Assembly: GCF_001194135.2 (NCBI RefSeq)
Contig: NC_068991.1
Location: 66,155,621 to 66,219,620 of the forward strand
Reading direction: 5' to 3'
DNA length: 64,000 bases
Source of the DNA: Octopus bimaculoides
Lineage: Eukaryota
A program made the position numbers and the translations under genes. The number at the start of each line of letters is the position of its first letter. The first letter of the stretch is position 1. Positions 27,030-50,096 of this stretch are shown piece by piece. The notes below the pieces were generated by a model that was given only the letters and a program-made list of their open reading frames with translations, was not told the origin of the DNA and did not search any database.

Positions 27030-27255
27030 AATCCTTCTGGTCCTGTCTGGCTGGTGCCATGAGATAATGCACTAAATAATACACAGTGTAAAGTTAGCCA
27101 TAGGAACAGTATCCGGCTGTAGAAACCACGCCAGATGATACATGTACAAGCATCAGTCTTTTGTGATCAGTATGTCCTATGAATGGAGTGGGGTGACTCA
27201 ACTTGTCCAGCTAATGCCAGTCTGGAAAGTCTTTGTAAAACGATGATGATGATGG
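27030..27255 (+). mobile_element. Degenerate RTE 3'-end copy
   Basis: TATCCGGCTGTAGAAACC and a GAT tail. Confidence 0.55.
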
Positions 27256-30829: not shown

Positions 30830-31289
30830 ACCAAGAATCACCATTGTCTACATCTCCACCCATGTTCATACACTTATGAAACCACCCACCTAGCCATCTC
30901 TGGTTCTTTGTCCCGATTTCTTTATCCATCTTCATATACCTTGAGAGTATCCCCTCCACCAGCTTTTGTCCTCTACAGCAAGACACCGGTTCCTGTCCTA
31001 TTCTGTTTTAGCTTCTCAGTATCTGGCATAAAGCCACTTCCCTCAATAATGTAACCCCACTCTGTTAAGGGGTCTTGTCATGTAAATTACTTGATGACCT
31101 CACTAGTACTGGTTCTGCGAAAAAAAACAGCACACACCTTAAAGTGGTTGGTATTAGGAAAGACATCCAGCCATAGAAACTTTGCCTGGGCAGATGTTAA
31201 AGCTTAAGGCAGCTTTCTAGGATCTCTTGTAGGATTCTGTCAAACTGTCCAACCCATTCTAGTCTGGAATACGGCTGTTGAATGATGAT
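30830..31289 (+). mobile_element. RTE-tail-related repeat, longer old subfamily
   Basis: GTGGTTGGTATTAGGAAAGACATCCAGCCATAGAAAC and CTGTCCAACCCAT. Confidence 0.65.
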
Positions 31290-31293
31290 TTAA

Positions 31294-31509
31294 CTCTAGG
31301 ATTCAGATCATTGTCAAATGTAATGATTATTTATTCACATCGTTTGAAATTAATCACGCATTATCTTGTAGCTCAGTGTTTTCAATGATGTGATTGTTTA
31401 TTTTTAGAATGACATTATAGGGTAGGTGTGAGAGGCCTGATTTGTTCAGATTGAACATAAAACAGATAGAATAAATGAGGTGGATATGGCCAACTTAAAT
31501 GCTAAAGGG
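31294..31509. mobile_element. piggyBac-like MITE family 2 (TIR CCCTTTAGCATT)
   Basis: TTAA at 31290-31293; ends AATGCTAAAGGG; colinear with 33704-33922 and 48741-48950. Confidence 0.78.
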
Positions 31510-32624
31510 TTGAATATGACAACCAGTTTATTTCTTGTCAATTTTATGTTGTCTTAATGTATGTGTAATAATTTCTATTTAAGCAGTGCACAGTCTTGCT
31601 TCATGTGGATTTTTTTTTATCAAGTTCTGTTATTAATCCAGGTGTCATGCATTAACTTGTACCTGTATTTGTATGTTTGGTATTAATATTTAGTTATATC
31701 ATGTAGTGCATTAATGGTATCTAGTATTTTGTTATTGGGTAAACCTAAGGATTTGAGTAGACCTCTAATGAAAGGCATTCCAACCATGACCAGCTTGTCT
31801 TCTGTTTTTAGGCTTAGTGTAATCTGTATGTTTCTTTTTTGAAGGTGGTATGGTACAATTTGAAGAAAATTTGGCTGCTGTTTCTACCTGTCAAACCACC
31901 ATGTAGAAGCTCACTTATTGGCTTGTTAAATTTTTAGTTATACTATGGGGTATGTGAACCAGTGTTCTTCATGGGGATGGGTGGGGATAAAGCAACTGGG
32001 CAAATTGCCATATTTAGACAAAAGATGGTTTTCAACTATGGATGGGTCTTTGCTGTTGACCATGGTAAAGAAAGAAGAATTATATGGCTGCAAACTCTAT
32101 TTTGTCTTCTCATAAATAAAGAGTGTGAAAGTGCCAAAATTTTACTATTTGTTTTGTGAGAGTGGAGGATGGTGTTTGTCAGTCTGAGAAACACTGGTCT
32201 AAATTATATTTGATATTTACATATTCCATGGCATGTATAGACAGTGTCTAATATTTAGTTATACCATGGATGTATATTTGGTGTGTAATATTTAGTTAAC
32301 TCCAGGTGAACTCTGAATGAGCAGACCCATGATCAAAGGCAGTTTGATCTAGGTCTATCTTGACCAGTATATTCTTCCAATTTTAAAGACAGTTTGGCTA
32401 TGATATGTTTAACTGCTATTTCTAGCAGGTCTAGCAACTGTGTATGGACAAGGCTACTAATAAAATTTTCAAATGCCTTGCATCCACTCAGGAAAAGCTA
32501 AAATTATAAAAATATTGTGCTTGAATAGAAATATACCAGTGGACCCGTGAAAAATTCACAGAAAACATTAAAAATGTAAGCATCTGTAAACAGTGTACCT
32601 GTGCCATGAGAAATGTTTGTATAT

Positions 32625-32772
32625 TATGACTGTCTTTACGTTCTGAGTTCAAATTCTGCCGAGATCGACTTAGCCTTTCGTCCTTTCGGGGTCAATAAAT
32701 TAAGTATCAGTTGTGTACTGGGGTCGATCTAATCAACTGGCACCCTCCTCACAAAAATTCAAGCCTAGAAAA
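32625..32772 (+). mobile_element. Second SINE family copy
   Basis: Colinear with 24505-24665. Confidence 0.8.
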
Positions 32773-33419
32773 GTATATTGTGACAGTTACAGAATATAGA
32801 AAGTAATGTAACACCAATGACTAAATAGTCCAACCAAAATATCTGTTACACAAACGTAAATGGAATTACTATTTAACCTTAAAATGCATCATACATATTC
32901 AAAGAACCTTAATGTACAAATTGAAATGCGAAAGAACGGCATAATAAATGGATTTATGAATGAAAGTTTGGTAATTGTGTTTATTTCCACCACACAACAC
33001 TTATTATTGCAAACACGTTTTAACTAACCTAAAACTATACACACAGACAAATACATTCATATATATGTCTCAAGTTGTACCTGTAATTCAAAGGGGCCAG
33101 CCTTGTCGTATTCTGTGTGAGGCTGAATATCCCTGAGAACTATGCTAATGTTATGCATGTCTGTGGAGTACTCAGCCATTTGTGAGTTAATTTTATCCTT
33201 GTGTGGTAATGAAAAGTTAAATTGACATCCAATATTTGCTCTGAACTTTTCTTTGGATTTATGTATCTACTGTCTCTCTCACTTTCTCTCTTTCTCTTTC
33301 ACTTCCTTTGTGCCCCCCCCCCCTTCTCTCCTGCTTTTGATTTAACAATGTGTATATGTATCTATGTATCTACTCTTGCAATGTGATAAACATTTAAAAA
33401 CACAAAACGAACGCTGTCA

Positions 33420-33481
33420 CCACTCACTGTCTCTTTCACTCTCTCACTTTCTCACTCCCCCTTTCTCACTCTCTCTCTCTC

Positions 33482-33515
<34 letters not shown>

Positions 33516-33540
33516 TTCCTCTCTGTCCTCCTCTCTTGCT
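33420..33540. repeat. (CT)n-rich microsatellite; many (TA)n, (CA)n and (TACA)n tracts elsewhere, e.g. 6342-6660
   Basis: Directly visible. Confidence 0.9.
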
Positions 33541-33703
33541 TTGCCACTTCTTTGAAGGAAGTGTGGTGCACACAACAGGTATGTACAAAAACAAAAAGTT
33601 AGCGTATTGATATTATTGATGATTACTCATAATTACTCTTTCAATCTCCTTGAAAGTGAAAATGAATTTTAAAAAAATTCTTTTCCAGTTTACACATAAT
33701 GCA

Positions 33704-33922
33704 TTCTTTAGCATTCAGGTTAATTTATCGAATATATTGCTTATTGATCCACATTTAAAAAAAAATAACCATGTAGTATCTTGTAGTTTCAAGATTTTGA
33801 AGATATGATTGTTTAATTTTAGAAGACATTGTAGGGTAGGTTTGAAAAGCTGGATCTGGCCAGTTTCAACATGAAACAGGTAGAATATTTGAGCAGAGAT
33901 GGCCAGTTTAAATGCTTAAGAG
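33704..33922. mobile_element. MITE family 2 copy
   Basis: TTCTTTAGCATTCAG start; AATGCTTAAGAG-TTAA end. Confidence 0.75.
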
Positions 33923-33959
33923 TTAAAGAATAGTGTTTTTTGTTCTGACCCAGTTCATT

Positions 33960-35643
33960 AAAGAAAATATTATTTCAGCACATGCTGAAAAATATGTCAA
34001 GATAATTAGTCACAAAGGAATAGTATTTTGAATCATGAAGTCAATATTTTATGTCTTTTAACTATTCAAGAATATTTTGCTGTCGAAATTAGTAAGTTTG
34101 TCTGCTGTTTAGTGATAACTTCTCCATTGATCTTCACCATTTGGTCTGCTTTCAGGCACAATAGATGAGAAATGAGAAGTTAGGATTATAAACTGCTTTT
34201 GGGTCTAGTATCTTTAATAATTTCATCTTCACAAAAAAGCAGAGTTTTTCTTAATTGAATACAGCTCCACTAGGAATTTCAAACTATCAATCTTAAACTT
34301 TCTAATGTTCTTTATCATCAAAATATTCAATAATTAAATGCGCTGTTGCCTTTCTTCCATCATTGTTTTTCTCTTTTCATCTTTAATGAACAAACTCTAG
34401 AAGTTCTTGTATTCTGATGATGTCATTAAATATAGTATAAACTTGTAATGCTCAGATTGGAATCCAGCATTCAGTAAATTCCCTTTCTGTAGTACATTCT
34501 GAAGGAAAAGTAGCATTTCGTTGCCACCAACTTTCAATTCATTTCAGAAATAGAGAAGTAAATCTGTAAATTGCTCTCATATCACACTGAAACTTTCTAA
34601 TGTTTTTTATCATCAAAATATTCACTGATTGAATGTGCTGTTGTCTTTCTTCTTTTCATTGTTTTCTTGAGAAAGCTTACTTGGTTTGTGCAAATTTAGG
34701 TATATTGTGGCAATCTGTCACAATTCCTTCAATAAGTGTGAACTCTAATCTCTTGCCCCTGTGAGAGATTAAAAAAAAAACCCTCTATATATGAGAGCAA
34801 TATGCTGATGGCATGACTAGCATCAGAGGGGAAAGAATGACCAGTGCATCCCAGAATAAAAACAGATTACACAGCATCTTGGTAATTTCTGGAATCCATT
34901 TTTGGTACTCTTCATTGAAGAATAGCTATTGCTTGAGAATCTTGTGATATTTTCTAAAGTAGATTTTCTTTCATGCAAGGTGTATTTGATAATATTATAA
35001 AGACCAAAAGTCATTGGATTTTCATCACTTACAATAATTAAAAATGCATCTTCAGCACAATTCTTTTTCAAATCAAAGTACTTCACAACTCTAACCAAGA
35101 CTTGTGTAACTGATGTCTGTATATTATCAGTTATGATAGAAAATTCTTGTCTTAGAGATAGCCATGATAAAAGAGCATATAATGAAATGCCCTCTTGTAC
35201 ACTGTCAAAAGATGGTTGCTTGTAAAAGTAATGTTGTTCTGAAAAATACACAGCAAATAAGCAGTTCACCTTGCCTGTTCATTCTTTGTTGACTTCTTTT
35301 CTGGCTTAAATCGAGAAATTTCAACACAAGGTTTAGCCCTATTAGACATTTAGACATTTTAATGATTTTATTCAAAAGTTTGTTTTATTAACACACATTT
35401 TACATTTCTTAGTAACAATATTGCAAGATTTACTGTAGCTAACTTCATCATTTTTAACTTGTAGCCAGTCCTTAAATTCAGGATTCTGCAGCCAATCTTC
35501 CTTGTATGACTCTGTATGATATCATTTCCTTTCTTAGTGGGTGTTTTTATTTCACCATTTATTATGATAGAAGGCAGGGTGTGATAGGAAAAATAGGAAC
35601 ACTCACTCATACACAAGTCATGATGCATGATAAGCACCAACAC
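33960..35643 (-). pseudogene. Degraded hAT-family (ZNF862/Tip100-like) transposase
   Basis: EFSIITD...VVKYFD...FL...GLYNIIKYTL...LENITRFSSN...MKSTKNGFQKL matches the hAT catalytic-core pattern; limits approximate. Confidence 0.7.
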
Positions 35644-36363
35644 TGAACAGTAGGGTTGCCAGGCACAAAGGGCCTCATGTACAGCTTATATATAAATCAT
35701 TTAATGTCATGTCTCGTTAGTTTTTGAATGTCACTTTTGATATCTATATGCACTGGATTCATGATTTTACATAGTTTATTAAACTCGCATTGTGATTTGG
35801 ATTTCTTTGATTTCATCTGTGTATAATTTGGAATATGTTTGTGTATTGAATGTCATATAGTTCCATAAGGTTTTTGTTGCTATTGATGTTGTATAGGAGA
35901 ATTTTAAAATATTTTTATGTTAGGTTTATGAAGTTAATTTTGTGTGTATGTGTGAAGTGCTCTGTTTTTTAAATATATTCTGTGCTGACCTGTGATGTTG
36001 GAAAAGTAAATAATTTCTTTCTTTTTTTTTCTTCTGATAAGAAGTATTGCTTTATTCTGATTCCACGTACTCTTAAGTGGATGTTAGGTAACTTATCTGA
36101 TTAGGATGGCGATAGCACAGATGAACTGAATTTCATAAAATTGTCTGATGAATTCTTGGAGTTGGTCTTCATTAAAAAAAAAAAATGTAACTAGTAGTTT
36201 GGAACTATATATGTTTGACCATTTCATCTGAGTCTGACACAGTAGCAGATGTTTCTGACTTCAAAGAAACATCTGTTTACACCATTTGTAAATACCTTTA
36301 AAATGGCATGAATTGTCCTAAAATCTCTTTTCCTCTCCTGATGTCTAGTACTTATATGTAACT

Positions 36364-36739
36364 GGTGCAGGTGTGGTTGTGTAGTAAGAAGTTTGCTTCC
36401 CGACCCCACATGGTTCTGGGTTCAGTCCCACTGCATAACACCTTGAGCAATACAGCCTTGGGCTGACCATTGCCTTGTGAGTGTATCTGGTAGATGCAAA
36501 CTGAAAGAAGCCCATCATGTAATATATATATATGTGTGTGTTTGTCTCTCGCCATCACTTGACAACTGGTGTTGGTGTGTTCTTGTCCTCCATAACTTAG
36601 CGGCTCAGTATAAGATATCAATAGAATAAGTACCAGGCTTAAAAAGAAAACTAAGTACTGGGGTTGATTCATTTAACTAAAATTCTTCAAAGCAGTGCCC
36701 CAGCATGGCTGCAGTCTAATGACTGAAACAAGTAAAAGG
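36364..36739 (+). mobile_element. Full-length tRNA-derived SINE, same family
   Basis: Box A/B-like head (GTGGTTGTGTAGTAAG, GGTTCAGTCCC), CORE-like segment, internal (TA)(TG) tract, tail ACTGAAACAAGTAAAAG. Confidence 0.85.
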
Positions 36740-37996
36740 TAACTGGGTTAAAAAAAAAAAAAAATTACAGTTTTTAATGTTATAAATTAAGAAATAGAAG
36801 TATTTCATTAGCATATTCTGTAAATCTTTCTAATAGCGTAAAAGGGATTTTTTTCCCCCTCTCTTTGCACCAAAATACTTAAAACCCTTCACCATTGCTT
36901 ATATTCTGCCACTTCTTGTCATGCTACCATTAGTCAGCCTTCTGCTGCAGTAGTGACTGGAAACAAACCACAAGTGACTGCTGATTGGTTGCAGAGCAAA
37001 GTAATCAGCAGCAGCCTCCTCAGGTTAAATTTTTTCCCTTATTGACTCAGATCTCACGGAGCGCTAAAATCTTTGTACTAGCAGTTGTTGGGAAACCATT
37101 TAATATCTTAAATTTTAAAATGAAATTTCATTTGCATTAAAAATAAATTAGATTGAAATTTGATTTTATTTAGTAATATGTTTCTTTTAAAATATTGTAT
37201 TGGCGTTAAGTTTGTTTTTCAGCTAGATACTTTTGAATCCTATTGCACTTCACGGTATCTTGGGCCTGTTTTCGATTGTAACTTTGGCTTAACTAGTGCT
37301 TTGTGAGTAGGATTTTGTTACATATAACAAGCTTTCACTTGGTTTCTGTACATGTCAGTGTTGATTTCAAAGCTGTAACTTAGTGATTTAAAAAAAAAAA
37401 AAAAATGCTAGGGTTGAAATGATTGACTAAAAGTCATTGATGTCAGTGACTCAGCAGGGCCACAATGTGAATGGCTGAAACCAGTAAAAGAATACATAAA
37501 ATGTTCACTCATATTAATTATCCACTTCAGTGCTTTTGTTAAAATGAATTGTAAAAGATAAGTTCATCTGATGATCCAGCAGTGTTAGTAAATGAAAGTA
37601 CAACATAGTAAATATTAGTGTATGCATTTGGACAACTTTACGTGTGTTTTCTAAATTTATTAAACCAACTATTACACAGTATATTTTAATGATGATAAAA
37701 TAATATTCCTAACTCCAAGTTTAGAAAATATATGGAAAAGAAAGTTGTCATTCTGAAATATTACACTTTTTCAAAAAGCGTGATAATGTGAGACCTTGTA
37801 TTTTTAGTAACCTTGAGGATTCTACTCGCATGCTGTTCATGTTTAGAGGGAGGCCTGTTTTCTTAACGTGTGTAGTGTTTCATTGAATTGTCGACGGCTA
37901 CAAGATTGGTGTCTCTTTCCTCAGTTCTGTATTCTTTGTATTGTCACTTATTTCATTCAACCCTCTTGTTACCGTATTTCTGTTGAGATACTCTGT

Positions 37997-38238
37997 TTCA
38001 TCATCATCGTTTGATATCTGTTTTCCATGCTGGCATGGGTTGGATGGTTCGACTGGGGTCTGGGAAGCCAGGCGGCTGCACCAGGCTCCAATCTGATGTG
38101 GCACTGTTTCTACAGCTGGATGCCCTTCCTAATGCCAACCACTCCGAGAGTGTAGTGAGTTCTTTCTACGTGCCACCAGCATGGGGCCAGAGGGGGCTGG
38201 CATCAACCACGTTTGGATGGTGCTTTTTATGTACCACC
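37997..38238 (-). mobile_element. RTE 3'-end copy
   Basis: Reverse complement of the 1533-1796 and 48281-48547 family. Confidence 0.85.
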
Positions 38239-38730
38239 AAAGAATTTAGTAAAATAACTTAGTTATCATTAAGATAATGATAGGAACATATATTGTGACT
38301 TAGGTTTGGTGGAAGATTTTAATTCAGAACTTTTGATTTTAAATCAGAAGAACATTTGTACTACAGAGCCAGAGGTGGTTTCAGATGGGTTGGTATCAAA
38401 AGGGTTAGGGCATGAGAGTATGGATCAGTTTGGTTTTAACTGTTACAGTTTTGCTGTTAAGGAAATAGTTCAAATTTTGGTTCTTTACAAAGCCAGTTGA
38501 GATGCTGAGGAAAAGTTATTTTATTATTTTTATGTATGTGTTTACTCCATCTATTGTAGTTTCTGCTTGATAATCTAATCAATTCTTTTGACTAGCATAC
38601 CTTATAAGTAAATCCTTTAATCCCAACTATATATCTGTCAGTGGAGAATTCTACCTACACTAACTGAGAAGTTAGCATTAATGACAATTATTGCAATGAT
38701 TTTAATCTAATACTAATAATCATTTCTTAG

Positions 38731-38763
<33 letters not shown>

Positions 38764-39221
38764 TTTAAAAATAATTAAACTTAGATTTTTATTTTCCTTT
38801 TCACATGGTTTTCTAAATTTATACAATTGCTACAGCCATTTTGCTGTCTGAAAGGCAGTACATTGTATTGCTCTCTTCTGTCCTCTCTCTGTTCACAATC
38901 TAGTGGTTAGCTGCATGAAATACCATCCAACTTTAAAAGTATTTTGTCCAACAATTTATATACATAAATAGAAACAGTTTTAACTTTTGTAGCATTGGAA
39001 AGTAGATGTAGAGCAATTTTTAAAGAATTAGGGTTCAATACCAAATATTTTAGTTGTCTTAATTTGTAATTTTTAAAACGCTTACAAACCAAAGAAATTA
39101 CAAACATGACAATAATGATGGTTTGTAGAATAATGTTTGTTTTTTAACGTTTTACATTATTTGAAAATTTATCCTCCAGATTTTTAAACATTTTTCCTTT
39201 GTGTATTTATTTTCATTCAAG

Positions 39222-39293
39222 ATGGCAAAAATGATGTACGGACTGATGCTATGCTTGTGTGGGCTCCCAATGCTGATCTATGTGAATCAAGAA
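39222..39293 (+). CDS. RCOR: CoREST exon 3, ELM2 (DGKNDVRTDAMLVWAPNADLCESR)
   Basis: ttcaag acceptor, A|gtaagt donor, conserved MLVWxP; follows a 27.3-kb intron; phase 1-1. Confidence 0.92.
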
Positions 39294-39659
39294 GTAAGTA
39301 GTGACAATCTATTTACAAATAATTTCTAGAAGGGCACTATTTGGAAAAAAAAAAAAAAAAGGGCTGAGAGGGGAAGGAAAAATTGTCCAAGCCAACCAGC
39401 CTGTCATTATAAATACATGATCAATGTTTGGGTTGCTGGCAAATGTTGGTTCATGTACTTCAGTGTTCCTTGAACTGTAAACATCTCTCTTAATCCTTTC
39501 TTTATTATATTTCTAACCAAAATAAACTCCTTATGTGTTTCAGTTAAATGAAAAAATAATTATGAATTTAGACTGGTGTCATAAGACAACTTTTTTTTTT
39601 ATTTATTGACATACAAATGATTTTTGGACAAAATTTAAAGTGCAGAAGCCTAGTGGACC

Positions 39660-39799
39660 TTAGAAATAATACATTTCTAAACCTCTGAGAGAGATTTATG
39701 CAGTAGTGATATGTTGAAGTAGTTGTATGATGTGAACTTCTTCAACGTATCACTACTGCATAAATCTCTCTGAGAGATTTAGAAATATATTATTTCTAA
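39660..39799. repeat. Near-perfect inverted repeat, 60-bp arms extending to ~65 bp with a 10-nt loop
   Basis: 39660-39719 versus reverse complement of 39740-39799: 4 differences. Confidence 0.95.
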
Positions 39800-39836
39800 T
39801 TTTGAAATCAGTGAATGTATTTCACTAGAATAATTA

Positions 39837-39975
39837 TATGTTTACAAGAGCTTGACAGGCATCTTTGACTAGCAGGTCATGCTACTCCAGACTGATGATG
39901 AGCAAAGACTCAGAAATATGTCTCTGGATGCAGGCTTAGCTGGGTGGAGGTGCTTGTCTCCCCCTTGTAAACATA
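39837..39975 (+). ncRNA. Minimal type I hammerhead ribozyme on a long helix I (Penelope/retrozyme type)
   Basis: tccaga-CTGATGA-tgag(caaaga)ctca-GAAA-tatg-TC-tctgga at 39886-39928; helix I extends irregularly to tatgtttacaag/cttgtaaacata. Confidence 0.82.
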
Positions 39976-41443
39976 AGGACACAGGAAATGTGTCAAGGCC
40001 GACAGGAAGTGGTGCGGCTTCCTAGGTCTAAACAAACAGTAGTATTATTCCCTTCAAGTTGACAGCATACAACTACTTCCTAGTGAACCTATTCTAAAAA
40101 AGAGAAACATGAAAAATAGTATTTTTGTGAGAAAAATTTCTTTAATAGATTTATCTGAGAAGCTTTTACATATCATCAATAAATGAATAAAAAAATAGTT
40201 TTATGAAACCAGTCTGAATTCATTGATTATTTTAGAATTTAATTAAAATGTATAAGGGTGTAATGTAATTAGAAACACAGAAACGATTGTGTTTAATAGG
40301 AAACAGATTTCAAACAGTCTGCATGCACCAAGCTTTAGAAATGACATTTTCATGTTCAATTTTAGGTTAGATTAATATCTGAGATGAGTTATTAATAAGA
40401 TTATAATTTTTCAGACTATTAATCTCATCCTTAGAGATGAAGCATTTTCCAGTATTTATTTGTATGCTACATTCCATTAAAGCTTAGTGGGCAAGAACAT
40501 TATTACTCCTGATTTAGTAATAAAGGTTCCTAGTTCAAATCCTGTATGGCATACACATCCAGAGATAAAACATCTGATGGGTTAGGGATCAACCTGATTG
40601 AAATGTGTAGCTTGTAAATCTGAAAAACCTTTTCATCTAAAGAGAAGGTTAATTGTCTGAAAAATTTTAATCTTATTAGGTTAGATGTCTTACAACTGGG
40701 TACTTTAGTAAATGCTAATCACACTAACGAGAGGTTATTTTCAAAGATGAATAGAACGGTTAACTTTGATGGTATTGGTTGAATGAGTTGGCATTCCAGC
40801 ATGTGCTATTTGTTGTGAGCCATTGCATCTATGAAATGCTATTTCCTAAGATTCTACTGTGCTAAAAGCAGCTTGCTATTACATGCTAAACTTCTTCGGT
40901 CACCACTCATTGTCCAGTCATATCACATGTCCTTATTAGTTCACTCATCTTTCCTGCAGTCTCATGCTGAATTACATTCTCAGTCTCAATATTCTCTGTC
41001 TTTCATACAAGTTAACATAATATTCAACAGATCATGCACGACTCATTTCTCTACTCCTTCTGCAGATATGTATTTGATGCCCATATCTTGCGACCATTGA
41101 GCAAGACTACTTCTCTGATGTACCTAGGATATTGTTTTCTATTATCAATTAAGGTCTTATTAGCCTTTAATCTGTTAATGTTTCAATATTAGACAACCTT
41201 TTTTTAGGTCTGGAACATTTTTTGCAGTTCTTTGGCATCTATCAATGAGAAGCAGGTCACTAGCAGATAAAATTTTTTAGGAACATTTGATCTTGATATT
41301 GTAATTGTATCCAATATACTGGTCTTATTGATAAATAATTTTAAATATAATAGATTTCAGTGACCTCTTTAGGGGTATGCTCTGCTTCTTGCATTTGATG
41401 CCCAAAATTGTAATTTCTTTTTCTTTGTATCTCTTTTACTTAA

Positions 41444-41646
41444 CCCTTTAGCAAAAAACCAACCATATCTAGCCCCCAAATTCTACCTGTTTTATGTTGA
41501 AAGTGGCCATATTATACCTCTCACACTTACCCTACAGAGTTAATCTAAAAATTAACAATCGCATCCTCAAAGTCTAAAAGCTACGTGACAATTAATTTTT
41601 AAAAATATAATCATAACATTTGACTGAATAATCTGAATGCTAAAAG
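41444..41646. mobile_element. MITE family 2 copy in reverse orientation
   Basis: TTAA at both ends (41440-41443, 41647-41650); CCCTTTAGC start; CTGAATGCTAAAAG end. Confidence 0.8.
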
Positions 41647-42019
41647 TTAAACTATTACATGACTATATCAGTAATTTTAGATTGTTGCTACTACCATTCT
41701 TAGTTGGTAATTTATCTACCTGGTCCCAATTTTTAATTATTTATAATAAAAAAATTTATTAGCATTAATGAAAATTATTTTTAGAAGGAGTAAGGGAGGC
41801 AACCCAAGATCTCATTGAATTAAAAATTAAAATGATGTTCTGGGTGGTATGGAAGAGTTTGATCTTTGATATCTGTGATAGCAACTCTTGACAGGTTTTT
41901 CTTACTCAACCTTTTCGGCAAAGCATAGTCAGCACAAAGCTGTTATCTCTGAACAACTTGAATATTATGTAACTTCAGTGTGAATAAAATTTATTTATTA
42001 GTGAATTTAAAATAATCTT

Positions 42020-42195
42020 TTCTACTCTAGGAACAAGGCCCAAAATTTTTCAGGAGGGGGTCAGTCGATTAGATCAACCCAGTATGCAACTGGTACTTAC
42101 TTTATCGACCCCAAAAGAGTGAAAGGCAAAGTCGACCTTGGTGGAATTTGAACTTAGGGCATGCTAACGTTTCTGCTAGCTCTCCGCCTTAGTCA
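42020..42195 (-). mobile_element. Second SINE family copy
   Basis: Reverse complement of 24505-24665. Confidence 0.8.
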
Positions 42196-43530
42196 ATTTA
42201 AAATAGTGGCAATGGAAATTTCCCTAAGGTGCCTGGCTACCATGCTTGACAAAAACAAATTTTAATCACTTGTAATTGTAATGATAATGAGAAGAAAATT
42301 CATTAGTGTTAATGAAAACCAGATATTTGCTAATTTTAATTATTTTCACACTAAAGCTTATAATCTCCAAGTCTTGTTTGTCTTCAGCTTTTTTTATCCT
42401 TTGCCAAGGAGGCCTCATAAGACTGAAGTGTCTGGAGTTGTCTCCGTAATCATCAATGATGAGTTCATTGAAATTTTAGGGATTGTTTTAAAATGATCAG
42501 TTCATTAAATATGGCGTAACTTCATGTAAGTGAACCAACAAATTTTCGTAAATTAAAATTACAACTGCTGGGGAAGACTAAGGGAGATAACTCCTGTAAT
42601 TATAACGTTGAATGATGACCTGCAGTGGGAAGTGGATGTAATCTTTCACAAGTACAGAAACAACTCCAGGCATGTTTCAGCCTTTTGAAAGGTATTTCTG
42701 CTAGTTTCCCCCCAGTGTATTTATCAGTCAAAACCTAGGGTCTAATAAGTACTGGTGAGACTTTGATGTGTTTTTTGGAGTTGGCTCAAGAAGATTGAAA
42801 CCTGTCCAGCGATGGCATTGTACTTGACATGTATCAGACACCTGCCCTACTTAAACTTCATTCAATTTAAGACATTTTTTTGTATGAAAGGTGTCACATG
42901 GTACCCCTCCCTATTATTAATTTTCATTTATATTAACCCTACTCAACTACATCTGTTCTACTGCCCCTGTTGGAGTTGTGAACCTATTAACACTGTCTTT
43001 CTCCTTTGGACTTAATTATATTTTTACAAAAATAACAGCAGTTAAGGTAGTTATGAAATTATGTTATAACTAAATTAATTGTCCCAGCAAAGACAATTAA
43101 CACATTTTAGAAGGTTTTACTTATGATATAATTTCTTTAACTTGTCCTAAGACTGTCTTTATTTTTGTGGACTAAGATTGTTTATTTTAAAATGTTCAGG
43201 TTGAAATTAATATCTCCTATTTTAAGCTTATATAACTGTGCTGTAAGATTATGTTCCAAATATAATTTAACATAAACGTAAATTAAAACATATTTTTGAT
43301 TATTTAAAAGTTAAGTGTGTTTTGTTGGAAATCTAGTCATGAAAAGGTTAAAGAAATGATCTTGTGTTTACTTTGATGACTACACAGATACTATCATGTT
43401 AATCAATCATTAATTCTTTCTATAATTATCTGAATAAACTCAGATTTTCAGTTAGTCAAACTAAGTATCTAGTTCTGCTATTCTTTTAGAAAGTTGCATG
43501 AAAAGAATAATTTTTCATTCTGTATTGCAG

Positions 43531-43583
43531 TTGATGATTATGTTACTATCGCAAAAGAGAAACATGGCTACAACATGGAGCAG
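43531..43583 (+). CDS. RCOR: CoREST exon 4, ELM2 (IDDYVTIAKEKHGYNMEQ)
   Basis: ttgcag acceptor, CAG|gtaatg donor, AKEKHGYNMEQ motif, phase 1-0. Confidence 0.96.
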
Positions 43584-45669: not shown

Positions 45670-45831
45670 GCTCTTGGTATGCTGTTTTGGCATAAACACA
45701 ACATAGAAAAAGCATTAGCAGACTTACCAAACTTTACTCCATTTCCTGATGAGTGGACTGTTGAAGATAAAGTTCTTTTTGAACAAGCATTTAGCTTCCA
45801 TGGGAAAAGTTTTCAGAGGATCAGGCAAATG
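45670..45831 (+). CDS. RCOR: CoREST exon 5, ELM2 end and SANT1 ([54 protein letters not shown])
   Basis: Near-identical to RCOR family sequence; ttccag acceptor, ATG|gtaaat donor; phase 0-0. Confidence 0.97.
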
Positions 45832-46296
45832 GTAAATATATTTATTGAAGCAATTTTTACATCACATGTCTAGATGTATATTTAGCACCTATATTTGCTC
45901 TTTATGACTACTTTTCATTGTGACTTGCTCTACAAACCCTAATTTATGAAACATTGATTTTTAAAATATTTTCTTTAGCAGTAAAAGATCATTATGTATA
46001 CTGAATTGTTAGACTTTCTCTTTAAACTTTGAGCGTCAGTTTTTAATTAAGCATCAACAGAATTTACAAATTGAATTGCAGGACAGCTAACAATTATTGA
46101 ATGGTTGTGGATAGCTGAGTTGATAGTGTCAGAGACCTGGCTGAAACATCTGCTTTATCTCATCCATAAGTAAAGTGTTTTTTGGCCATGACACTTCACC
46201 TTCAGTGGTACTCATGATTTATTAGATTATGGATTATTAAGAATAAAAATTTGGTAACTCTAGAAGAACAAATTAAAACTTGTTTCTGTGTTTCAG

Positions 46297-46421
46297 CTTC
46301 CAGATAAATCCATTGCTAGTTTAGTAAAGTATTATTACTCCTGGAAGAAAACCAGGTCAAGAACAAGTCTTATGGATCGCCAGGCTAAAAAACTGGCTGG
46401 ACATCCACGTGATGGAGACAG
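46297..46421 (+). CDS. RCOR: CoREST exon 6, SANT1 end ([41 protein letters not shown])
   Basis: tttcag acceptor, AG|gtgatt donor, [12 protein letters not shown] motif; phase 0-2. Confidence 0.96.
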
Positions 46422-46627: not shown

Positions 46628-46694
46628 TGATGGTGCATCGGATGAAGGAAGTAGAAACTCTGACAGTGATGTTGAGAATAACAAAGAGAATGGG
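46628..46694 (+). CDS. RCOR: CoREST exon 7, acidic linker (SDGASDEGSRNSDSDVENNKENG)
   Basis: cattag acceptor with pyrimidine tract, GGG|gtattt donor, in-frame stop just beyond the donor; phase 2-0. Confidence 0.85.
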
Positions 46695-46804: not shown

Positions 46805-46914
46805 ACCAGCAGAGGTGAAGATAGCAAAAGTTGTACCAATTGTGGAATGCATTCTTCTCAACTCCATTCAACCGCAAAAGGATCTCTGTGCAATAGTTGC
46901 AATCAATATTTGCG
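46805..46914 (+). CDS. RCOR: CoREST exon 8, Cys4 GATA-like zinc finger (TSRGEDSKSCTNCGMHSSQLHSTAKGSLCNSCNQYL)
   Basis: cctttcag acceptor, CG|gtaagt donor; phase 0-2, exactly bridging exon 7 (ends phase 0) to exon 9 (starts phase 2); four Cys at 46832, 46841, 46889, 46898. Confidence 0.9.
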
Positions 46915-48280
46915 GTAAGTGGAAGTTTGTTGTATTACAAGCCATATTGAAATTAACTTCAAGAATCTACTTCAAGAATTATGCATCTGAAATAAGATAT
47001 AATTGACTAGTTAATTGACTTGGCGTTAATTATTAGATTTATGGTATGAAGATAGCTGGATGAAAACCTGTGTGAGCTACAATTTTAGTCATCCTGTCCT
47101 TATGTTAAGGTCAGTTTATAAGATTTAGGAAAATGTGTTCCCTATATTTTAACCTTTTGAGTGTGAATTTTGTGTTCAACAAATTGTTTGGGTTATATAT
47201 CTTTTTATTTTTGTTTTATTTTTTTTTATTTTCATAATGTTCTACCCTTTATAAAAAATGGATACCATCTTAAGATTTAGTAGTAGCAACTATGAATTTG
47301 AAGAAAAAGTGGCTGCAGCAAATGAAAAATTGCAACAAGCGTAACTGTGTGGCGGACATGGAATTGGATGTTGCAATTTGTGATAGTGAAACGACCTGGA
47401 CATCAGTAATGAAAGTGATGATGAATTAAAAGGCAGAAAGAATGGAGTGTGGAATGAAGACTTTTAAAATATTTCTTTTCCAAATTTTTTTCTTCCCCCT
47501 TTTGAAAATACTGATCCCAGTCAGTTTACCCGAAGACTTAAAAAACCCACTCATTATTTTGCAAGACTAATTGCTGTGGAATTAATTTTACAATGAAAAA
47601 GTTTGTCCTTCTTTTTCCTGTTACAGGAAAAAAAAAAGGAGGACAAACTATGGACTCCTGCACCACTGAATGAAATTAGTACATTATTTTTGCTTTAGAT
47701 ACAATCATACACATTAGGAAGTTATATAATTTATTTTTATAAAATATATTTTCAAATTTACCTGGTCTTCAGTTTGTCAATTTACCTGTTTGATGAGTGA
47801 CAGATTCTGCTTAATTATATACAAGTTAATCTTTTATTGTTTTGGTGTGTGTATTTGTGTATATGTAATTTTTTGGTATTTTACTTCAATTGAACATCCA
47901 GCTATGTGTACAATTCTTTGAAGTGTTATACTACAGTCTTACTCCTGCTGAATATTGGCTTATAATTCTTGATATGGTGATCATCATTTAGGCAAAGTTT
48001 AAATAATTTTACATTTCACTGATTATTGTGTGCATTTACCTATAATAGAAGTAGTTTTTGTGACAAACATATTGATATAGATCTATATAAGAATTTTTTA
48101 AGTCGCTCTAAACACCACTTTGATATATAAAATCTAAAAGGTTAAACTTGTTTTATAAAAACATGAAATNNNNNNNNNNNNNNNNNNNNNNNNNNNNNNN
48201 NNNNNNNNNNNNNNNNNNNNNNNNNNNNNNNNNNNNNNNNNNNNNNNNNNNNNNNNNNNNNNNNNNNNNNNNNNNNNNNN

Positions 48281-48547
48281 ACTGGCTTGTGCGGGTGGCA
48301 CATAAAAGACACCATTTCGAGCGTGGCCGTTGCCAGTATCGCCTGACTGGCCTTCGTGCAGGTGACACGTAAAAGCACCAACTACACTCTCTGAGTGGTT
48401 GGCGTTAGGAAGGGCATCCAGCTGTAGAAACTCTGCCAAATTTAGATTGGAGCCTGGTGTTGCCATCCGGTTTCACCAGTCCTCAGTCAAGTCGTCCAAC
48501 CCATGCTAGCATGGAAAGCGGACGTTAAACGATGATGATGATGATGA
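48281..48547 (+). mobile_element. Young RTE 3'-end copy; its 5' part is in a gap
   Basis: Closely similar to 1533-1796; (GAT)n tail. Confidence 0.88.
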
Positions 48548-48740
48548 TTTAATAAGTTATGAGAAAACTGTCTAAAATACATTGCTTTAATCAAACATAT
48601 GATCATAATTTAGAAAGATTTTGAGAGACTGAAGGTGAAACTTTTTCACATAGTTTTTAAATTAGTACAAGTTTAAAGTTTTATGATTCTGAATATGAAA
48701 ATAATTGTGGTTTTAATCTATTTGTAGAAAATTTACCTAA

Positions 48741-48950
48741 TCCTTTAACATTCAGATTAATTTATCGTATGTAATGCTTATTTATTTACTTTGTTTTGAA
48801 TTAATCATACATTATCTTGTACTTTTGAAATTTTGATGATGTGATTGTTTATTTTTAGAATGACATTGTAGGGTAGATGCGAGAGGCAAAATCTGGCCAG
48901 TTTGAACATAAAACGGGTAGAATGCTTTGGTCAGTTTAAATGTTAAAGGG
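48741..48950. mobile_element. MITE family 2 copy
   Basis: TCCTTTAACATTCAG start; AATGTTAAAGGG-TTAA end. Confidence 0.8.
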
Positions 48951-49499
48951 TTAAATCTGTATAAATTTGTATTTACTTTTAACAGTAAGGCTAGTAACAG
49001 CAGAATTTTATTAGTTGAGGAGGTACAGAAATTATAATCTCTAGTAGTAGCTATGTTTTGCATGTTTATTTGCCTTGAAGGCAGGCTGGATGCATTCGCA
49101 CAATTCCAAAGCTACAATTTGCCATGTATCCAAATTTCCTCTGAAAGCAATATGTTGACAGGGTTGTTTATACAGTTTGCCTGAAAAACAGAAGTATTGG
49201 CACACAAATAATGTTGGAATTATTTAATTGTTTCTTCACCTGCTAAAACTGAGGCAGTTTTGAATTCAGGTATTATGGAAATTATTTCGTTTCCAGCCTT
49301 TTCATTGTATTAGCCACTTTTGATTGTTTGTGTGTCTAAAAGGCAAGATGGATTGGCACACGCGTGCATGCACACACTGAATTCCGATGTAGATTCATAG
49401 TAACGTGTTTTCCTTTATGACCACTGTCATATGTTCAAATTTAACCTTGTTGGTTGTTACCTTCTTTATTTCTCAATATTTTGATTGGCTAAGTAAAAT

Positions 49500-49745
49500 C
49501 ACTGCCAGCCATACATACAGGCTTGTCCTTTGCAGGTGTTAATGCCACATAAAATACATTTGTATTGGTTCCATATAAATGCACCTGAGCCAGTGGCACA
49601 TAAAGAGCACCCGGCATCCAACTGTAGAAGCAATGCCACACAGACACTTGGAATCTGGACAGCTTCCTGGCTGACCAGCTCCTGTCAGACCGTCCAACAC
49701 ATACCAGCGTGGGAAATGGATGTTAAATGATGATGATGGTGATGG
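49500..49745 (+). mobile_element. Diverged RTE 3'-end copy with internal deletion
   Basis: GTGGCACATAAAGAGCACCC, GGCATCC and a GAT tail. Confidence 0.7.
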
Positions 49746-49879
49746 TAGATCCATTTGTTATTAAAATCTAGGGAGTGAAGGAAGTAAAATAATTTTTTTT
49801 TTTTTTCTTGAAGCAGTTTACACAAATCTGAATTTATTTAATATATTAAATATGTATATATATATTTACAAATTATTAG

Positions 49880-50096
49880 GCGAACTGGTGTAATGAAATC
49901 CAGTACTGGACCGACCAAGCGTCGTGAACAACAGCATAGCCAGCATCGGCATAATCCTATGCGACATAAACGAAAGCCCCCACGTGGCATGTATTTGAAT
50001 GAAGATGACCTCAGGTTAATGCTCACTGGACCACTACAGCAAGCTGAACAAATTTTAAAGTCATTAGATGCAGAGCTTGTCTCTTTAAAACGACAG
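49880..50096 (+). CDS. RCOR: CoREST exon 9, linker/LSD1-binding region (RTGVMK...KRKPPRGMYLNEDDL...LDAELVSLKRQ)
   Basis: attag acceptor, CAG|gtaaga donor, KRKPPxGM and ELVSxKRQ motifs; phase 2-0. Confidence 0.93.

What the first reader, a model, noticed from the sequence alone, without database searches (positions are those of the whole stretch)
46805..46914. CoREST with a GATA/MTA-type zinc finger between SANT1 and the LSD1-binding linker
Seen: an exon required for frame continuity encodes SCTNCGMHSSQLHSTAKGSLCNSCNQYL and continues in exon 9 as RRTGVMKSSTGPTKRR, i.e. C-x2-C-x15-C-x2-C plus a basic tail. Established: vertebrate RCOR1-3 are ELM2-SANT-linker-SANT with no finger, whereas the ELM2-SANT relatives MTA and RERE/atrophin carry an atypical GATA finger (MTA tail approx. 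LCASCWTYWKKYGGLK versus LCNSCNQYLRRTGVMK here). Inference: an ancestral ELM2-SANT-GATA architecture retained in this lineage and lost in vertebrates. It could give CoREST its own DNA, nucleosome or protein contact where REST may be absent. It may already be present, unremarked, in invertebrate annotations.
Basis: partly seen in the sequence, partly recalled or inferred. Interest (0 to 1): 0.75.

Follow-up and report, generated by a model that had tools for sequence, protein, structure and literature searches.

The report
Conserved GATA-type finger in octopus CoREST
Exon 8 of an octopus CoREST (REST corepressor) gene encodes a real, conserved GATA-type zinc finger that cnidarians and most invertebrates share, vertebrates lost along with that exon, and the mainstream CoREST papers checked never mention; what it does is untested.

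Summary
Window 46805-46914 (+) is exon 8 of a 14-exon, 554-codon REST-corepressor gene. It encodes C-x2-C-x15-C-x2-C, followed by RRTGVMK and a basic tract in exon 9.

This is not an octopus or mollusc peculiarity. 115 of the 120 best homologues carry the finger, with four invariant Cys and an invariant Gly. They include molluscs, annelid, brachiopod, nemerteans, arthropods, echinoderm, hemichordates and amphioxus. Further searches added rotifers, a bryozoan, a nematode and a jellyfish.

Sequence profiles, AlphaFold2 (pLDDT about 90) and Foldseek all place it with GATA fingers. It falls below Pfam's GATA cut-off, which would explain why it goes unannotated.

Human RCOR1 and RCOR3 and a fish RCOR2 lack it. 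The fish gene keeps both flanking exons, now joined by one 298-bp intron. Two sponges, a flatworm, a leech and one spider paralogue also lack it.

Two protist CoREST-like proteins (Chromosphaera, an ichthyosporean, and 'Sdes') carry a canonical GATA finger at the same position. The ELM2-SANT-GATA order therefore predates animals.

A 2022 preprint already described the finger in nematode RCOR-1/SPR-1 and mentioned Drosophila, but called it convergent and invertebrate-born. These data contradict that. Function is inferred only; a nucleosome or DNA contact is most likely.

The parts
46805..46914 (+). Exon 8 of the RCOR gene: the finger exon (110 nt, phase 0 in, phase 2 out), encoding TSRGEDSKS-CTNC-x15-CNSC-NQYL(R)
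   Evidence: identical in O. sinensis and O. vulgaris; present in related cephalopod transcripts
46832..46900 (+). C4 core, C228-x2-C231-x15-C247-x2-C250; a predicted beta-hairpin (239-241 and 244-246) precedes the helix that starts at 248
   Evidence: (four Cys invariant in 97 sequences)
49880..50096 (+). Exon 9: completes the first Arg codon, then the RTGVMK tail (end of the finger helix plus the GATA-like G-x-x-R), the basic tract KRRE..HRHNPMRHKRKPPRG, and the start of the LSD1-binding helical linker
   Evidence: Pfam REST_helical 2e-30; aligns to human RCOR1 linker; net charge +12 over residues 228-292
46628..46694 (+). Exon 7: acidic Ser/Asp tract (SDGASDEGSRNSDSDVENNKENG) just upstream of the finger. 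The same exon boundary (..KENG|) occurs in Lingula, and the same exon is kept in fish RCOR2
46915..49879 (+). Intron 8 (2965 nt), at a phase-2 position conserved with Lingula; it contains an assembly gap at 48170-48280
45670..46421 (+). Exons 5 (45670-45831) and 6 (46297-46421), encoding SANT1
11628..43583 (+). Exons 1-4 (11628-11742 with the ATG, 11881-11940, 39222-39293, 43531-43583), encoding the N-terminus and ELM2
50849..54028 (+). Exons 10-14 (50849-50926, 51530-51587, 51795-51997, 52448-52665, 53902-54028 with the stop), encoding the rest of the linker, SANT2 and a Pro-rich C-terminus with the PPPLIRP motif

Best explanation
Exon 8 encodes a divergent GATA-type (treble-clef, Cys4) zinc finger that is an original part of CoREST, not an octopus addition.

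In CoREST-like proteins of two protists (Chromosphaera, an ichthyosporean, and 'Sdes') the same position holds a canonical GATA finger (x17 loop, W-R-R/K). In the cnidarian-bilaterian form the loop is two residues shorter (x15) and the Trp and Arg-Arg are gone. The four Cys, the CxNC Asn, the loop Gly, the aromatic helix face and a G-x-x-R-P-like basic tail remain. Vertebrates lost the finger exon. Two sponges, a flatworm, a leech and one spider paralogue lack the finger too.

In octopus the finger is predicted to be an independently folded zinc module on disordered tethers. An acidic tract (net -6) lies before it and a strongly basic tail (net +12) follows it. It sits between the HDAC-binding ELM2-SANT1 and the LSD1-binding linker-SANT2.

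The mechanism I consider most likely is inferred, not shown. The finger and its basic tail give the LSD1-CoREST-HDAC complex an extra contact with nucleosomal or linker DNA that is largely sequence-independent or at least not WGATAR-specific. This is the role proposed for the equivalently placed MTA1 finger. Such a contact would help position the two enzymes on chromatin.

My confidence that this is a conserved, ancestral GATA-type zinc module is about 0.9. My confidence in the DNA or nucleosome contact is about 0.4.
For: Gene and splicing.

Conservation: 115 of the 120 best homologues carry C-x2-C-x14-16-C-x2-C. In 97 non-redundant finger peptides C7, C10, C26, C29 and G37 are invariant, and N9, K22, G23, R35 and T36 are at least 90% conserved.

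Taxa outside the first hit list: rotifers, a nematode (Romanomermis), a bryozoan, ostracods, the jellyfish Rhopilema, and cnidarian-like transcripts.

GATA identity:
- Pfam GATA is the top family for 73 of 97 peptides, best E 6e-8.
- The CoREST finger profile hits only GATA1/3/4 and AreA fingers in the PDB with significance, E 3e-6 to 5e-4.
- AF2 gives pLDDT about 90 for residues 230-260, with two short strands and a helix, and flanks below pLDDT 50.
- The 14 best Foldseek hits of the finger-only model are all GATA fingers, TM 0.57-0.72.

Ancestry:
- Chromosphaera P0263 and 'Sdes' P0306 have ELM2-SANT regions that match human RCOR3 and RCOR1 at 1e-32 to 1e-36, against MTA1 at 1e-4 to 5e-7.
- Their fingers score 58 and 48 bits on Pfam GATA.
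- The finger aligns at the same place, ahead of a linker-like coil.
- Chromosphaera scores higher on the animal CoREST finger HMM (25.6 bits) than fungal GATA factors (17-18 bits) or MTA2 (5.8 bits).

Vertebrate loss. Octopus and Lingula share the exon boundaries and phases.

Charge layout.

MTA1 analogy: reviews place the MTA1 finger C-terminal to SANT and suggest non-specific or nucleosomal DNA binding (PMC4244562, PMC7736783).
Against: No functional data exist for any CoREST finger. The preprint notes that there is no evidence that nematode RCOR-1 or SPR-1 bind DNA.

The loop Trp and the Arg-Arg pair, which contribute to fold and DNA contact in canonical GATA fingers, are absent. Sequence-specific GATA-site binding is therefore unlikely, and any DNA binding must rely mainly on the helix and tail.

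The finger has been lost repeatedly without loss of CoREST: in vertebrates, a leech, a flatworm and a spider paralogue. Two sponges also lack it. It is dispensable in some settings.

Octopus departs from the consensus at the two most conserved aromatic positions, Y30N and W33L. It shows 7 amino-acid replacements in 33 codons against a decapodiform cephalopod, compared with 2 in 30 and 9 in 66 in the flanks. This could mean relaxed or altered constraint in octopus.

The Pfam GATA score for octopus is below the gathering cut-off: 21.9 bits as a peptide and 14.9 in the full protein, against 26.8.

Pre-animal ancestry rests on two protist proteins, and both sponges sampled lack the finger.
Confidence: 0.6

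Rival explanations
1. The finger is a protein-protein docking module rather than a nucleic-acid contact. It would recruit a transcription factor or another complex subunit to CoREST, or pack against HDAC or LSD1.
For: GATA-type fingers are known to act this way: the GATA-1 N-finger and the AreA finger-NmrA complex are among the PDB hits (1gnf/1y0j and 2vus). DNA-contact residues of canonical GATA fingers are largely missing. The conserved exposed aromatic pair Y30/W33 on one helix face would suit a protein interface. A review cites pull-down studies in which one of the MTA1/2 regions that bind RBBP4/7 includes the GATA-type finger (PMC4244562).
Against: No partner is known. The conserved basic residues (R34, R35, R40) and the +12 tail fit nucleic acid at least as well. 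The full-length AF2 model shows no confident packing against other CoREST domains (pTM 0.28, disordered tethers).
Confidence: 0.3
2. The finger arose within invertebrates and resembles GATA fingers by convergence. This is the reading of Darragh and Rifkin (2022). Under it there is no ancestral ELM2-SANT-GATA architecture.
For: Caenorhabditis RCOR-1/SPR-1 fingers are very divergent, with variable loops (x16-23), and lack most canonical GATA residues. Both sponges sampled lack a finger. The animal CoREST finger is below Pfam's GATA cut-off.
Against: The finger is present in a cnidarian, and in echinoderms, hemichordates and amphioxus, with the same x15 loop and tail. 'Invertebrates' is therefore not a clade in which it could have arisen without vertebrate loss. 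Fish RCOR2 keeps both flanking exons. Two protist CoREST-like proteins have a bona fide GATA finger (48-58 bits) at the same position. Profile and fold searches return GATA fingers and nothing else of significance.
Confidence: 0.08
3. In octopus the finger is a decaying or merely structural spacer. It is kept only because the exon is needed for the reading frame and has no specific activity.
For: Y30N, W33L and P21A substitutions sit at highly conserved positions, and the replacement rate against decapodiform cephalopods is higher than in the flanks. The module has been lost repeatedly elsewhere.
Against: All four Cys, N9, K22, G23, R35, T36 and G37 are intact. The exon is 100% identical between Octopus species whose nearby introns differ by about 8-10%. 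AF2 still folds the octopus sequence with pLDDT about 90. The jellyfish finger independently has N and L at the same two positions (CNEYLSRTG), and AreA-type GATA fingers have Leu at the W33 position. N/L is therefore a tolerated state, not decay.
Confidence: 0.1
4. Artefact: a chance cysteine pattern, a mis-called exon, or an exon not normally included in mRNA.
For: No RNA-seq from this animal was examined. Two mollusc gene models (Lottia P0086 and the scallop P0060) lack the exon.
Against: The splice sites are canonical and the exon is required for the frame. It is included in annotated proteins of two Octopus genomes and in cephalopod transcript contigs from four runs. It is conserved across phyla. 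It is the only such motif in the window.
Confidence: 0.01

Closest known systems
GATA-like zinc finger of Caenorhabditis RCOR-1/SPR-1 and of Drosophila CoREST (Darragh and Rifkin 2022 preprint, 10.1101/2022.05.20.492891)
   Same: Same protein family and same position between the two SANT domains. Same C4 pattern. The preprint reports 14-15-residue loops in other nematodes and Drosophila, matching x15 here. Absence from vertebrate RCORs was already noted.
   Different: Caenorhabditis fingers have x16-23 loops and lack the loop Gly and the Asn after Cys3. The octopus and consensus finger keeps both. The conserved intron is also elsewhere: after 36 nt of the finger in Caenorhabditis, against after the helix (YW|R) in octopus and Lingula. 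The preprint infers convergent origin within invertebrates; the data here indicate descent from a canonical GATA finger followed by vertebrate exon loss.
Canonical GATA-factor fingers (GATA1/3/4 C- and N-fingers, fungal AreA; Pfam PF00320)
   Same: Best and only significant sequence and fold matches. Shared features are CxNC...CxxC, the loop Gly, the helix starting at the second Cys pair, and a G-x-x-R-P-like turn followed by a basic tail.
   Different: The loop is two residues shorter (x15 against x17). The Trp and Arg-Arg of T-x-L-W-R-R are missing. G-L after Cys4 is replaced by Y/N-Q. The octopus score is below the Pfam gathering cut-off. The finger sits in a corepressor scaffold rather than a transcription factor. 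WGATAR binding is unlikely.
Atypical GATA finger of MTA1/2/3 (NuRD) and of RERE/atrophin
   Same: Same domain order: ELM2, SANT, a spacer of about 50-60 residues, then the finger, within an HDAC1/2-recruiting scaffold. The helix motifs are similar: CATCWIYWKKYGGLK in fish MTA2 (P0304) against the CoREST consensus CNSCYQYWRRTGVMR. The function of the MTA1 finger is also unknown, and nucleosomal DNA contact has been suggested.
   Different: MTA and RERE have an N-terminal BAH domain; CoREST has none. The MTA loop is x20 with an internal Cys. Finger-level similarity is weak (E=4.2 and 5.8 bits). No real RERE finger sequence was retrieved, so the RERE comparison rests on established domain annotation only.
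Protist CoREST-like proteins (Chromosphaera perkinsii Nk52_evm81s270, an ichthyosporean; EukProt 'Sdes' comp16009)
   Same: The ELM2-SANT regions are closest to RCOR (1e-32 to 1e-36). The finger is at the same position and is followed by a linker-like coil.
   Different: The finger is canonical (x17, W-R-R/K; 48-58 bits on Pfam GATA). There is no SANT2. Gahan et al. 2022 (PMC9400249) used the Chromosphaera protein as a 'CoREST-like' query, but their text never mentions zinc or GATA.
Human RCOR1/2/3 (the textbook ELM2-SANT1-linker-SANT2 CoREST)
   Same: ELM2, SANT1, the acidic SDSD tract, the QxRHxP..KRKPPxGMYL motif, the linker, SANT2 and the C-terminal PPPLIRP motif are all colinear.
   Different: There is no finger. 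The alignment breaks exactly over octopus residues 218-262, and fish RCOR2 has no exon there.

Membership tests
CoREST / RCOR | ELM2 + SANT1 + helical LSD1-binding linker + SANT2, in that order | tested here: met
   Pfam: ELM2 8.8e-11, Myb/SANT x2 9e-19, REST_helical 3e-30
CoREST / RCOR | Orthology to annotated RCOR proteins | tested here: met
   551 of 554 residues identical to 'REST corepressor' of O. vulgaris and O. sinensis. Human RCOR3 2e-145 and RCOR1 1.5e-123.
CoREST / RCOR | Binds LSD1 through linker-SANT2 and HDAC1/2 through ELM2-SANT1 | not testable with these tools
   Inferred only from conservation of the regions that do this in human RCOR1 structures
GATA-type zinc finger (Pfam PF00320) | Score at or above the Pfam gathering cut-off (26.8 bits) | tested here: not met
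   Octopus scores 21.9 bits as a peptide and 14.9 in the full protein. 73 of 97 homologous fingers hit at E<=1, best 6e-8. Amphioxus scores 24.9. Amphioxus and Saccoglossus carry a precomputed PF00320 hit.
GATA-type zinc finger (Pfam PF00320) | C-x2-C-x17(-20)-C-x2-C spacing | tested here: not met
   The loop is x15 in octopus and in most of the 115 finger-bearing homologues; the rest have x14 or x16. The protist CoREST-like fingers are x17.
GATA-type zinc finger (Pfam PF00320) | Treble-clef fold: zinc knuckle, beta-hairpin, and a helix starting at the second Cys pair | tested here: met
   Prediction only. AF2 pLDDT is about 90, with strands 239-241 and 244-246 and helix 248-257. The 14 best Foldseek hits are GATA fingers, TM 0.57-0.72.
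GATA-type zinc finger (Pfam PF00320) | Conserved loop Trp and Arg-Arg (T-x-L-W-R-R) | tested here: not met
   The alignments place a two-residue gap over the W-R. The octopus loop reads SQLHST.
GATA-type zinc finger (Pfam PF00320) | Basic tail C-terminal to the finger | tested here: met
   RRTGVMK...KRRE...HRHNPMRHKRKPPRG; net charge +11 over residues 251-292. R35, G37 and R/K40 are conserved.
GATA-type zinc finger (Pfam PF00320) | Zinc binding and (A/T)GATA(A/G) DNA binding | not testable with these tools
   Needs metal analysis and EMSA, PBM or SELEX
MTA/RERE-type ELM2-SANT-GATA scaffolds | Finger placed C-terminal to an ELM2-SANT pair | tested here: met
   SANT1 ends at about residue 176 and the finger starts at 228. 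The same order is seen in fish MTA2 P0304.
MTA/RERE-type ELM2-SANT-GATA scaffolds | N-terminal BAH domain | tested here: not met
   No BAH hit in octopus RCOR; BAH is present in MTA2 P0304
MTA/RERE-type ELM2-SANT-GATA scaffolds | Finger sequence of the MTA type (x20 loop, CxxCWxYWKKYGG) | tested here: not met
   No MTA1 hit with the octopus peptide at E<=10. MTA1 scores E=4.2 against the profile, over the helix only. MTA2 scores 5.8 bits on the CoREST finger HMM.

The most novel reading that the evidence does not exclude
CoREST began, before animals, as an ELM2-SANT protein with its own GATA DNA-binding finger. In cnidarians and non-vertebrate bilaterians the shortened finger plus its basic tail would still give the LSD1-HDAC complex an autonomous DNA or nucleosome anchor, or a docking site for lineage-specific recruiters. 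Vertebrates would have deleted that exon and come to rely entirely on external recruiters such as REST and SNAG-domain factors. The human-based domain model of CoREST would then be a derived, reduced state.
Probability: 0.25. Interest if true: 0.75.

Novelty: new member of a known kind. Interest (0 to 1): 0.5.

Why it matters
Structural and mechanistic work on LSD1-CoREST-HDAC, as represented by the PDB entries and papers checked, uses human RCOR proteins, which lack this domain. The Drosophila and Nematostella CoREST papers checked never mention it. If the finger contacts DNA, nucleosomes or a recruiter, models of how the complex is targeted in most animals are missing a part, and vertebrates are the exception.

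The analysis here also reverses the one published inference about the finger's origin. The preprint called it convergent and invertebrate-born. The data show a jellyfish with the same finger, two protist CoREST-like proteins with a canonical GATA finger at the same place, and a fish RCOR2 gene from which the finger exon is missing. This ties CoREST to MTA and RERE as descendants or relatives of an ELM2-SANT-GATA ancestor.

The idea is cheap to test in laboratory models such as Drosophila, C. elegans and Nematostella.

For genome annotation, the finger is missed because it scores below Pfam's GATA cut-off. A dedicated profile such as alignment A1 would find it.

Tried and rejected
- Chance or artefact: rejected.
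- Classifying the finger as MTA-type: rejected at the sequence level. The octopus peptide finds no MTA1 hit at E<=10, the CoREST profile gives MTA1 E=4.2, and MTA2 scores 5.8 bits. Only the helix motif and the domain order are shared.
- Full-length AF2 model for inter-domain contacts: not interpretable (pTM 0.28, disordered tethers).
- Genomic loci for amphioxus, Rhopilema and Saccoglossus, to compare intron positions: none on record. Lingula and a fish RCOR2 were used instead.
- Searching with the sponge Sycon protein to collect non-bilaterians: only 9 hits because of the word index, but one of them was the jellyfish sequence.
- Searching with a Chromosphaera plus Rhopilema profile: 6 hits, one of them the second protist protein.
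- Naming the representative-library hits: many are unnamed Logan, ENA or JGI contigs. The state in tunicates, cyclostomes, placozoans, ctenophores and choanoflagellates could not be determined, and some 'cnidarian-like' assignments (P0124, P0131, P0137, P0305) rest on similarity to Rhopilema only.
- No real RERE finger sequence was retrieved.
- Rfam found nothing in the window. Long ORFs are only repeat or gap artefacts. Tandem repeats are only simple TA, TC and short repeats.
- Literature: four searches found only one document that mentions a CoREST finger.
Full report
**1. What is in the sequence**

Window 46805-46914 (+) is bounded by ttcag| and |gtaagt. In frame 1 it reads TSRGEDSKSCTNCGMHSSQLHSTAKGSLCNSCNQYL, and the other two frames are not credible.

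Joined to its neighbours it gives one open frame. The acidic exon 46628-46694 ends ...NNKENG in phase 0. The 110-nt exon follows and ends after two bases of an Arg codon. Exon 49880-50096 supplies the third base and continues RTGVMKSSTGPTKRREQQHSQHRHNPMRHKRKPPRGMYL.... The exon is 3n+2, so skipping it would shift the frame.

I built the whole gene. It has 14 exons, all with AG/GT sites, and 554 codons from the ATG at 11628 to the stop at 54026-54028. The finger exon is exon 8. The product differs at three C-terminal residues from P0001, the annotated 'REST corepressor' of Octopus vulgaris (GCA_951406725.2) and O. sinensis (GCA_006345805.1).

Most of the surrounding intron sequence in the window is about 90-92% identical to those two assemblies, while the 110-nt finger exon is identical. 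The window therefore comes from a close but different Octopus genome, and the exon is under purifying selection. The motif C-x2-C-x14-18-C-x2-C occurs once in all six frames of the 64 kb.

**2. Is the exon used?**

I had no RNA-seq from this animal. P0003 is a decapodiform cephalopod orthologue, 87% identical. It is encoded as an unbroken ORF on contigs of about 2 kb from four independent SRA runs, which must be transcripts. One of them (L003) aligns colinearly with every exon of the window, including 46817-46908 followed directly by 49879-50098. The annotated proteins of two Octopus genomes include the exon.

**3. How widespread is it?**

Of the 120 best database homologues, which are 57-100% identical over the conserved core, 115 have C-x2-C-x14-16-C-x2-C at this position. 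They come from bivalves, gastropods, a chiton, cephalopods, nemerteans, a brachiopod, an annelid (Owenia), chelicerates, a myriapod, crustaceans, many insects, a sea urchin, two hemichordates and amphioxus.

In 97 non-redundant finger peptides the four Cys and G37 are invariant, and N9, K22, G23, R35 and T36 are at least 90% conserved. The consensus is K-x-x-CSNCG-x4-Q-x3-TPKGSLC-x-SCYQYWRRTG-x-x-R-x3-GP.

A profile search of 1.84 billion representatives gave 3391 relatives. Among those that could be named:
- Fingers occur in rotifers, the nematode Romanomermis, the bryozoan Bugula and ostracods.
- The jellyfish Rhopilema esculentum has CNNCNLASSQLNNTPRGQLCNACNEYLSRTGVMRP, with an x15 loop.
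- Several unnamed, cnidarian-like transcripts have the finger too.

The following lack the finger:
- Human RCOR1 and RCOR3. Their PDB chains align in two blocks that skip octopus residues 218-262.
- Vertebrate-type representatives and fish RCOR2.
- The sponges Sycon and Oscarella, the flatworm Macrostomum, the leech Helobdella and one spider paralogue.
- Insect isoforms that skip the finger together with the N-terminal part of the linker. This resembles Drosophila CoREST-M, which cannot bind LSD1 (PMC7145674).

**4. What kind of finger is it?**

- Pfam GATA (PF00320) is the best family. Octopus stays below the gathering score: 21.9 bits as a peptide and 14.9 in the full protein, against 26.8. 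So do the cnidarians (14-15 bits) and amphioxus (24.9 bits). That would explain why the domain is rarely annotated.
- The profile of the 97 fingers finds GATA1 (2.8e-6), GATA3, GATA4 and AreA fingers in the PDB, and nothing else of significance. MTA1 scores E=4.2, over the helix only.
- AlphaFold2 on the full protein gives pLDDT about 90 for residues 230-260. It predicts two short strands (239-241, 244-246) and a helix (248-257), flanked by segments below pLDDT 50 (189-224 and 265-285).
- The finger-only model has pLDDT 79. Its 14 best Foldseek matches in the PDB are all GATA fingers, with TM 0.57-0.72 and probability 0.82-1.0. E-values are only 0.01-0.35, as expected for 47 residues.

Relative to canonical fingers the loop is two residues shorter, and the Trp and Arg-Arg of T-x-L-W-R-R are missing. 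The CxNC Asn, the loop Leu and Gly, the Asn after Cys3 (in octopus and 39 of 97 sequences), the G-x-x-R(-P) turn and a basic tail are kept.

**5. Origin**

P0263 is from the ichthyosporean Chromosphaera perkinsii. P0306 is labelled 'Sdes' in EukProt; my guess, from the label only, is the ichthyosporean Sphaerothecum destruens. Both are ELM2-SANT proteins whose ELM2-SANT region matches human RCOR3 and RCOR1 at 1e-32 to 1e-36, against MTA1 at only 1e-4 to 5e-7.

Both carry a canonical GATA finger at the position of the animal finger:
- Chromosphaera: [36 protein letters not shown], 58 bits on Pfam GATA.
- 'Sdes': [36 protein letters not shown], 48 bits on Pfam GATA.

In each case the finger is followed by a coil that weakly matches the CoREST linker. 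The helix GLYWKKHG lies between canonical GLYxKxHG, MTA WxYWKKYG (fish MTA2: CATCWIYWKKYGGLK) and CoREST YQYWRRTG. On the animal CoREST finger HMM, Chromosphaera scores 25.6 bits, above fungal GATA factors (17-18 bits) and MTA2 (5.8 bits).

Together with the jellyfish and deuterostome fingers, this makes descent from a true GATA finger the simplest reading. The finger would have been shortened before the cnidarian-bilaterian ancestor and lost several times afterwards.

The caveat is that both sponges sampled lack it, and I could not determine the state in choanoflagellates, ctenophores, placozoans, tunicates or cyclostomes.

**6. How vertebrates lost it**

Lingula has the same exon layout and phases as octopus. 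Its acidic exon ends ...KENG| in phase 0. Its finger exon ends after two bases of the first Arg codon. The next exon starts G|AGA ACA GGA, encoding RTG.

In the fish Diretmus RCOR2 the homologous acidic exon (...SDSDFEVDAKKE|) is joined across one 298-bp intron to the homologous tail and linker exon. That exon reads AVKQ...SGPVKKE..QYRHHPLRARRRPPKGMYL, to be compared with octopus ..TGPTKRRE..QHRHNPMRHKRKPPRGMYL. Its acceptor is now in phase 0. The finger exon is gone, and the RRTGVMR part at the start of the next exon has been replaced. This was shown for one vertebrate paralogue only.

**7. Prior knowledge**

Four full-text searches found one document that mentions a CoREST finger, the preprint 10.1101/2022.05.20.492891. 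It reports a GATA-like finger between the SANT domains of Caenorhabditis RCOR-1 and SPR-1. It notes 14-15-residue loops in other nematodes and Drosophila, and absence from vertebrates. It concludes that the motif 'likely arose in invertebrates' and 'evolved convergently'.

The Nematostella CoREST evolution paper (PMC9400249) and the Drosophila CoREST complex paper (PMC7145674) contain no mention of zinc or GATA.

The octopus finger is therefore a new member of a known but little-known kind. What this analysis adds is its near-universality outside vertebrates, the cnidarian and protist evidence, and the exon-level loss.

**8. Likely mechanism (inferred)**

The module is a small zinc-stabilised fold on flexible tethers. 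An acidic Ser/Asp tract (net -6) precedes it. A helix and tail of net +12 follow and run straight into the LSD1-binding linker. It lies between the HDAC-binding and LSD1-binding halves of the scaffold.

By analogy with GATA fingers and with what is proposed for the equally placed MTA1 finger (PMC4244562, PMC7736783), I favour an auxiliary contact with nucleosomal or linker DNA without GATA-site specificity (about 0.4). A protein-docking role is the main rival (about 0.3). A largely vestigial spacer is less likely (about 0.1).

Octopus is unusual in having N and L where 72 and 85 of 97 sequences have Y and W. The jellyfish has the same pair, and AreA-type fingers have Leu at the W position. AF2 still folds the octopus sequence confidently.

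**9. Verdict**

Novelty is modest because of the preprint. Function is open and easy to test.

Noticed in passing
window 46914/49880 junction; P0076, P0083, P0084 (amphioxus), P0098 (hemichordate Glandiceps), P0035 (Strigamia), P0003 (decapodiform cephalopod): Isoforms or gene models in several phyla differ exactly at the conserved phase-2 intron after YW(R). Amphioxus and Glandiceps have 7-20-residue inserts between YQYWR and RTG, Strigamia has YQYWRLGRTG, and cephalopod transcripts have a one-Arg deletion (YWR-TGV). Alternative splicing here would break the finger helix from its basic tail and might regulate the finger.
   Followed up: partly
window 46421/46422 donor; P0002, P0003: Decapodiform cephalopod RCOR has an extra 17-residue segment (RCGRIKLIYSFRNITLSN) between the SANT1 exon and the acidic exon. 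In the octopus window, reading through the donor GGAGACAG|gtga hits a stop at once, so octopus lacks it.
   Followed up: no
window 52659-52667: Two GT donors lie 6 nt apart at the end of exon 13. The downstream one gives ..QHPRYRLLPQP as in P0001. The upstream one gives ..QHPRLLPQP as in the decapodiform transcripts.
   Followed up: partly
alignment A1 columns 32 and 35 (octopus N30 and L33): Y30 and W33 lie one helix turn apart. Sequences with Leu at position 33 tend to have a small residue at 30: N in octopus, A in Daphnia, and N and L in the jellyfish Rhopilema. Ischnura keeps Y with L, and Patella has N with W. This may be a co-varying aromatic pair.
   Followed up: partly
P0130, P0132, P0141, P0144 (insect-like representatives): These proteins run from the end of SANT1 straight into ..IQ.NKQ.. 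of the linker, skipping the finger and the N-terminal part of the linker. They look like Drosophila CoREST-M, which does not bind LSD1 (PMC7145674). In insects the finger would then belong to the LSD1-competent isoform only.
   Followed up: partly
P0094, P0104, P0107, P0139 (unnamed transcript contigs); P0060 (scallop) and P0086 (Lottia) gene models: A few otherwise typical lophotrochozoan-like CoRESTs lack the finger. The unnamed transcripts lack the finger and the RTG tail, which suggests real secondary loss in some spiralian group; the leech Helobdella lacks it as well. The scallop model keeps RRTGVIRS with no finger, and the Lottia model lacks both finger and tail; both look like missed exons.
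   Followed up: partly
window 53902-54028 (exon 14) and the C-termini of homologues: The Pro-rich C-terminus carries a motif, (L)QQPPPLIRP preceded by PPPLL(K/R), that is conserved from octopus to amphioxus and vertebrate RCOR2/3. AF2 predicts disorder there. It looks like a short linear motif, and none of the searches or papers consulted here gave it a function.
   Followed up: no
window 2808-2817, 5077-5145, 6395-6620, 8077-8240, 12689-12703, 19834-19981, 48170-48280: There are seven assembly gaps (743 N in total), several flanked by (TA)n. One lies inside intron 8 between the finger exon and exon 9. Intron 2 is about 27 kb (11941-39221). No Rfam family was found, and the long ORFs listed are repeat or gap artefacts.
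   Followed up: yes
window versus L001 and L002: Intron sequence around the finger exon is mostly about 90-92% identical to O. sinensis and O. vulgaris (about 98% next to exon 9), and the protein differs at A506T, S534P and P538H. The window therefore comes from another Octopus species or a divergent haplotype, not from either assembly.
   Followed up: partly
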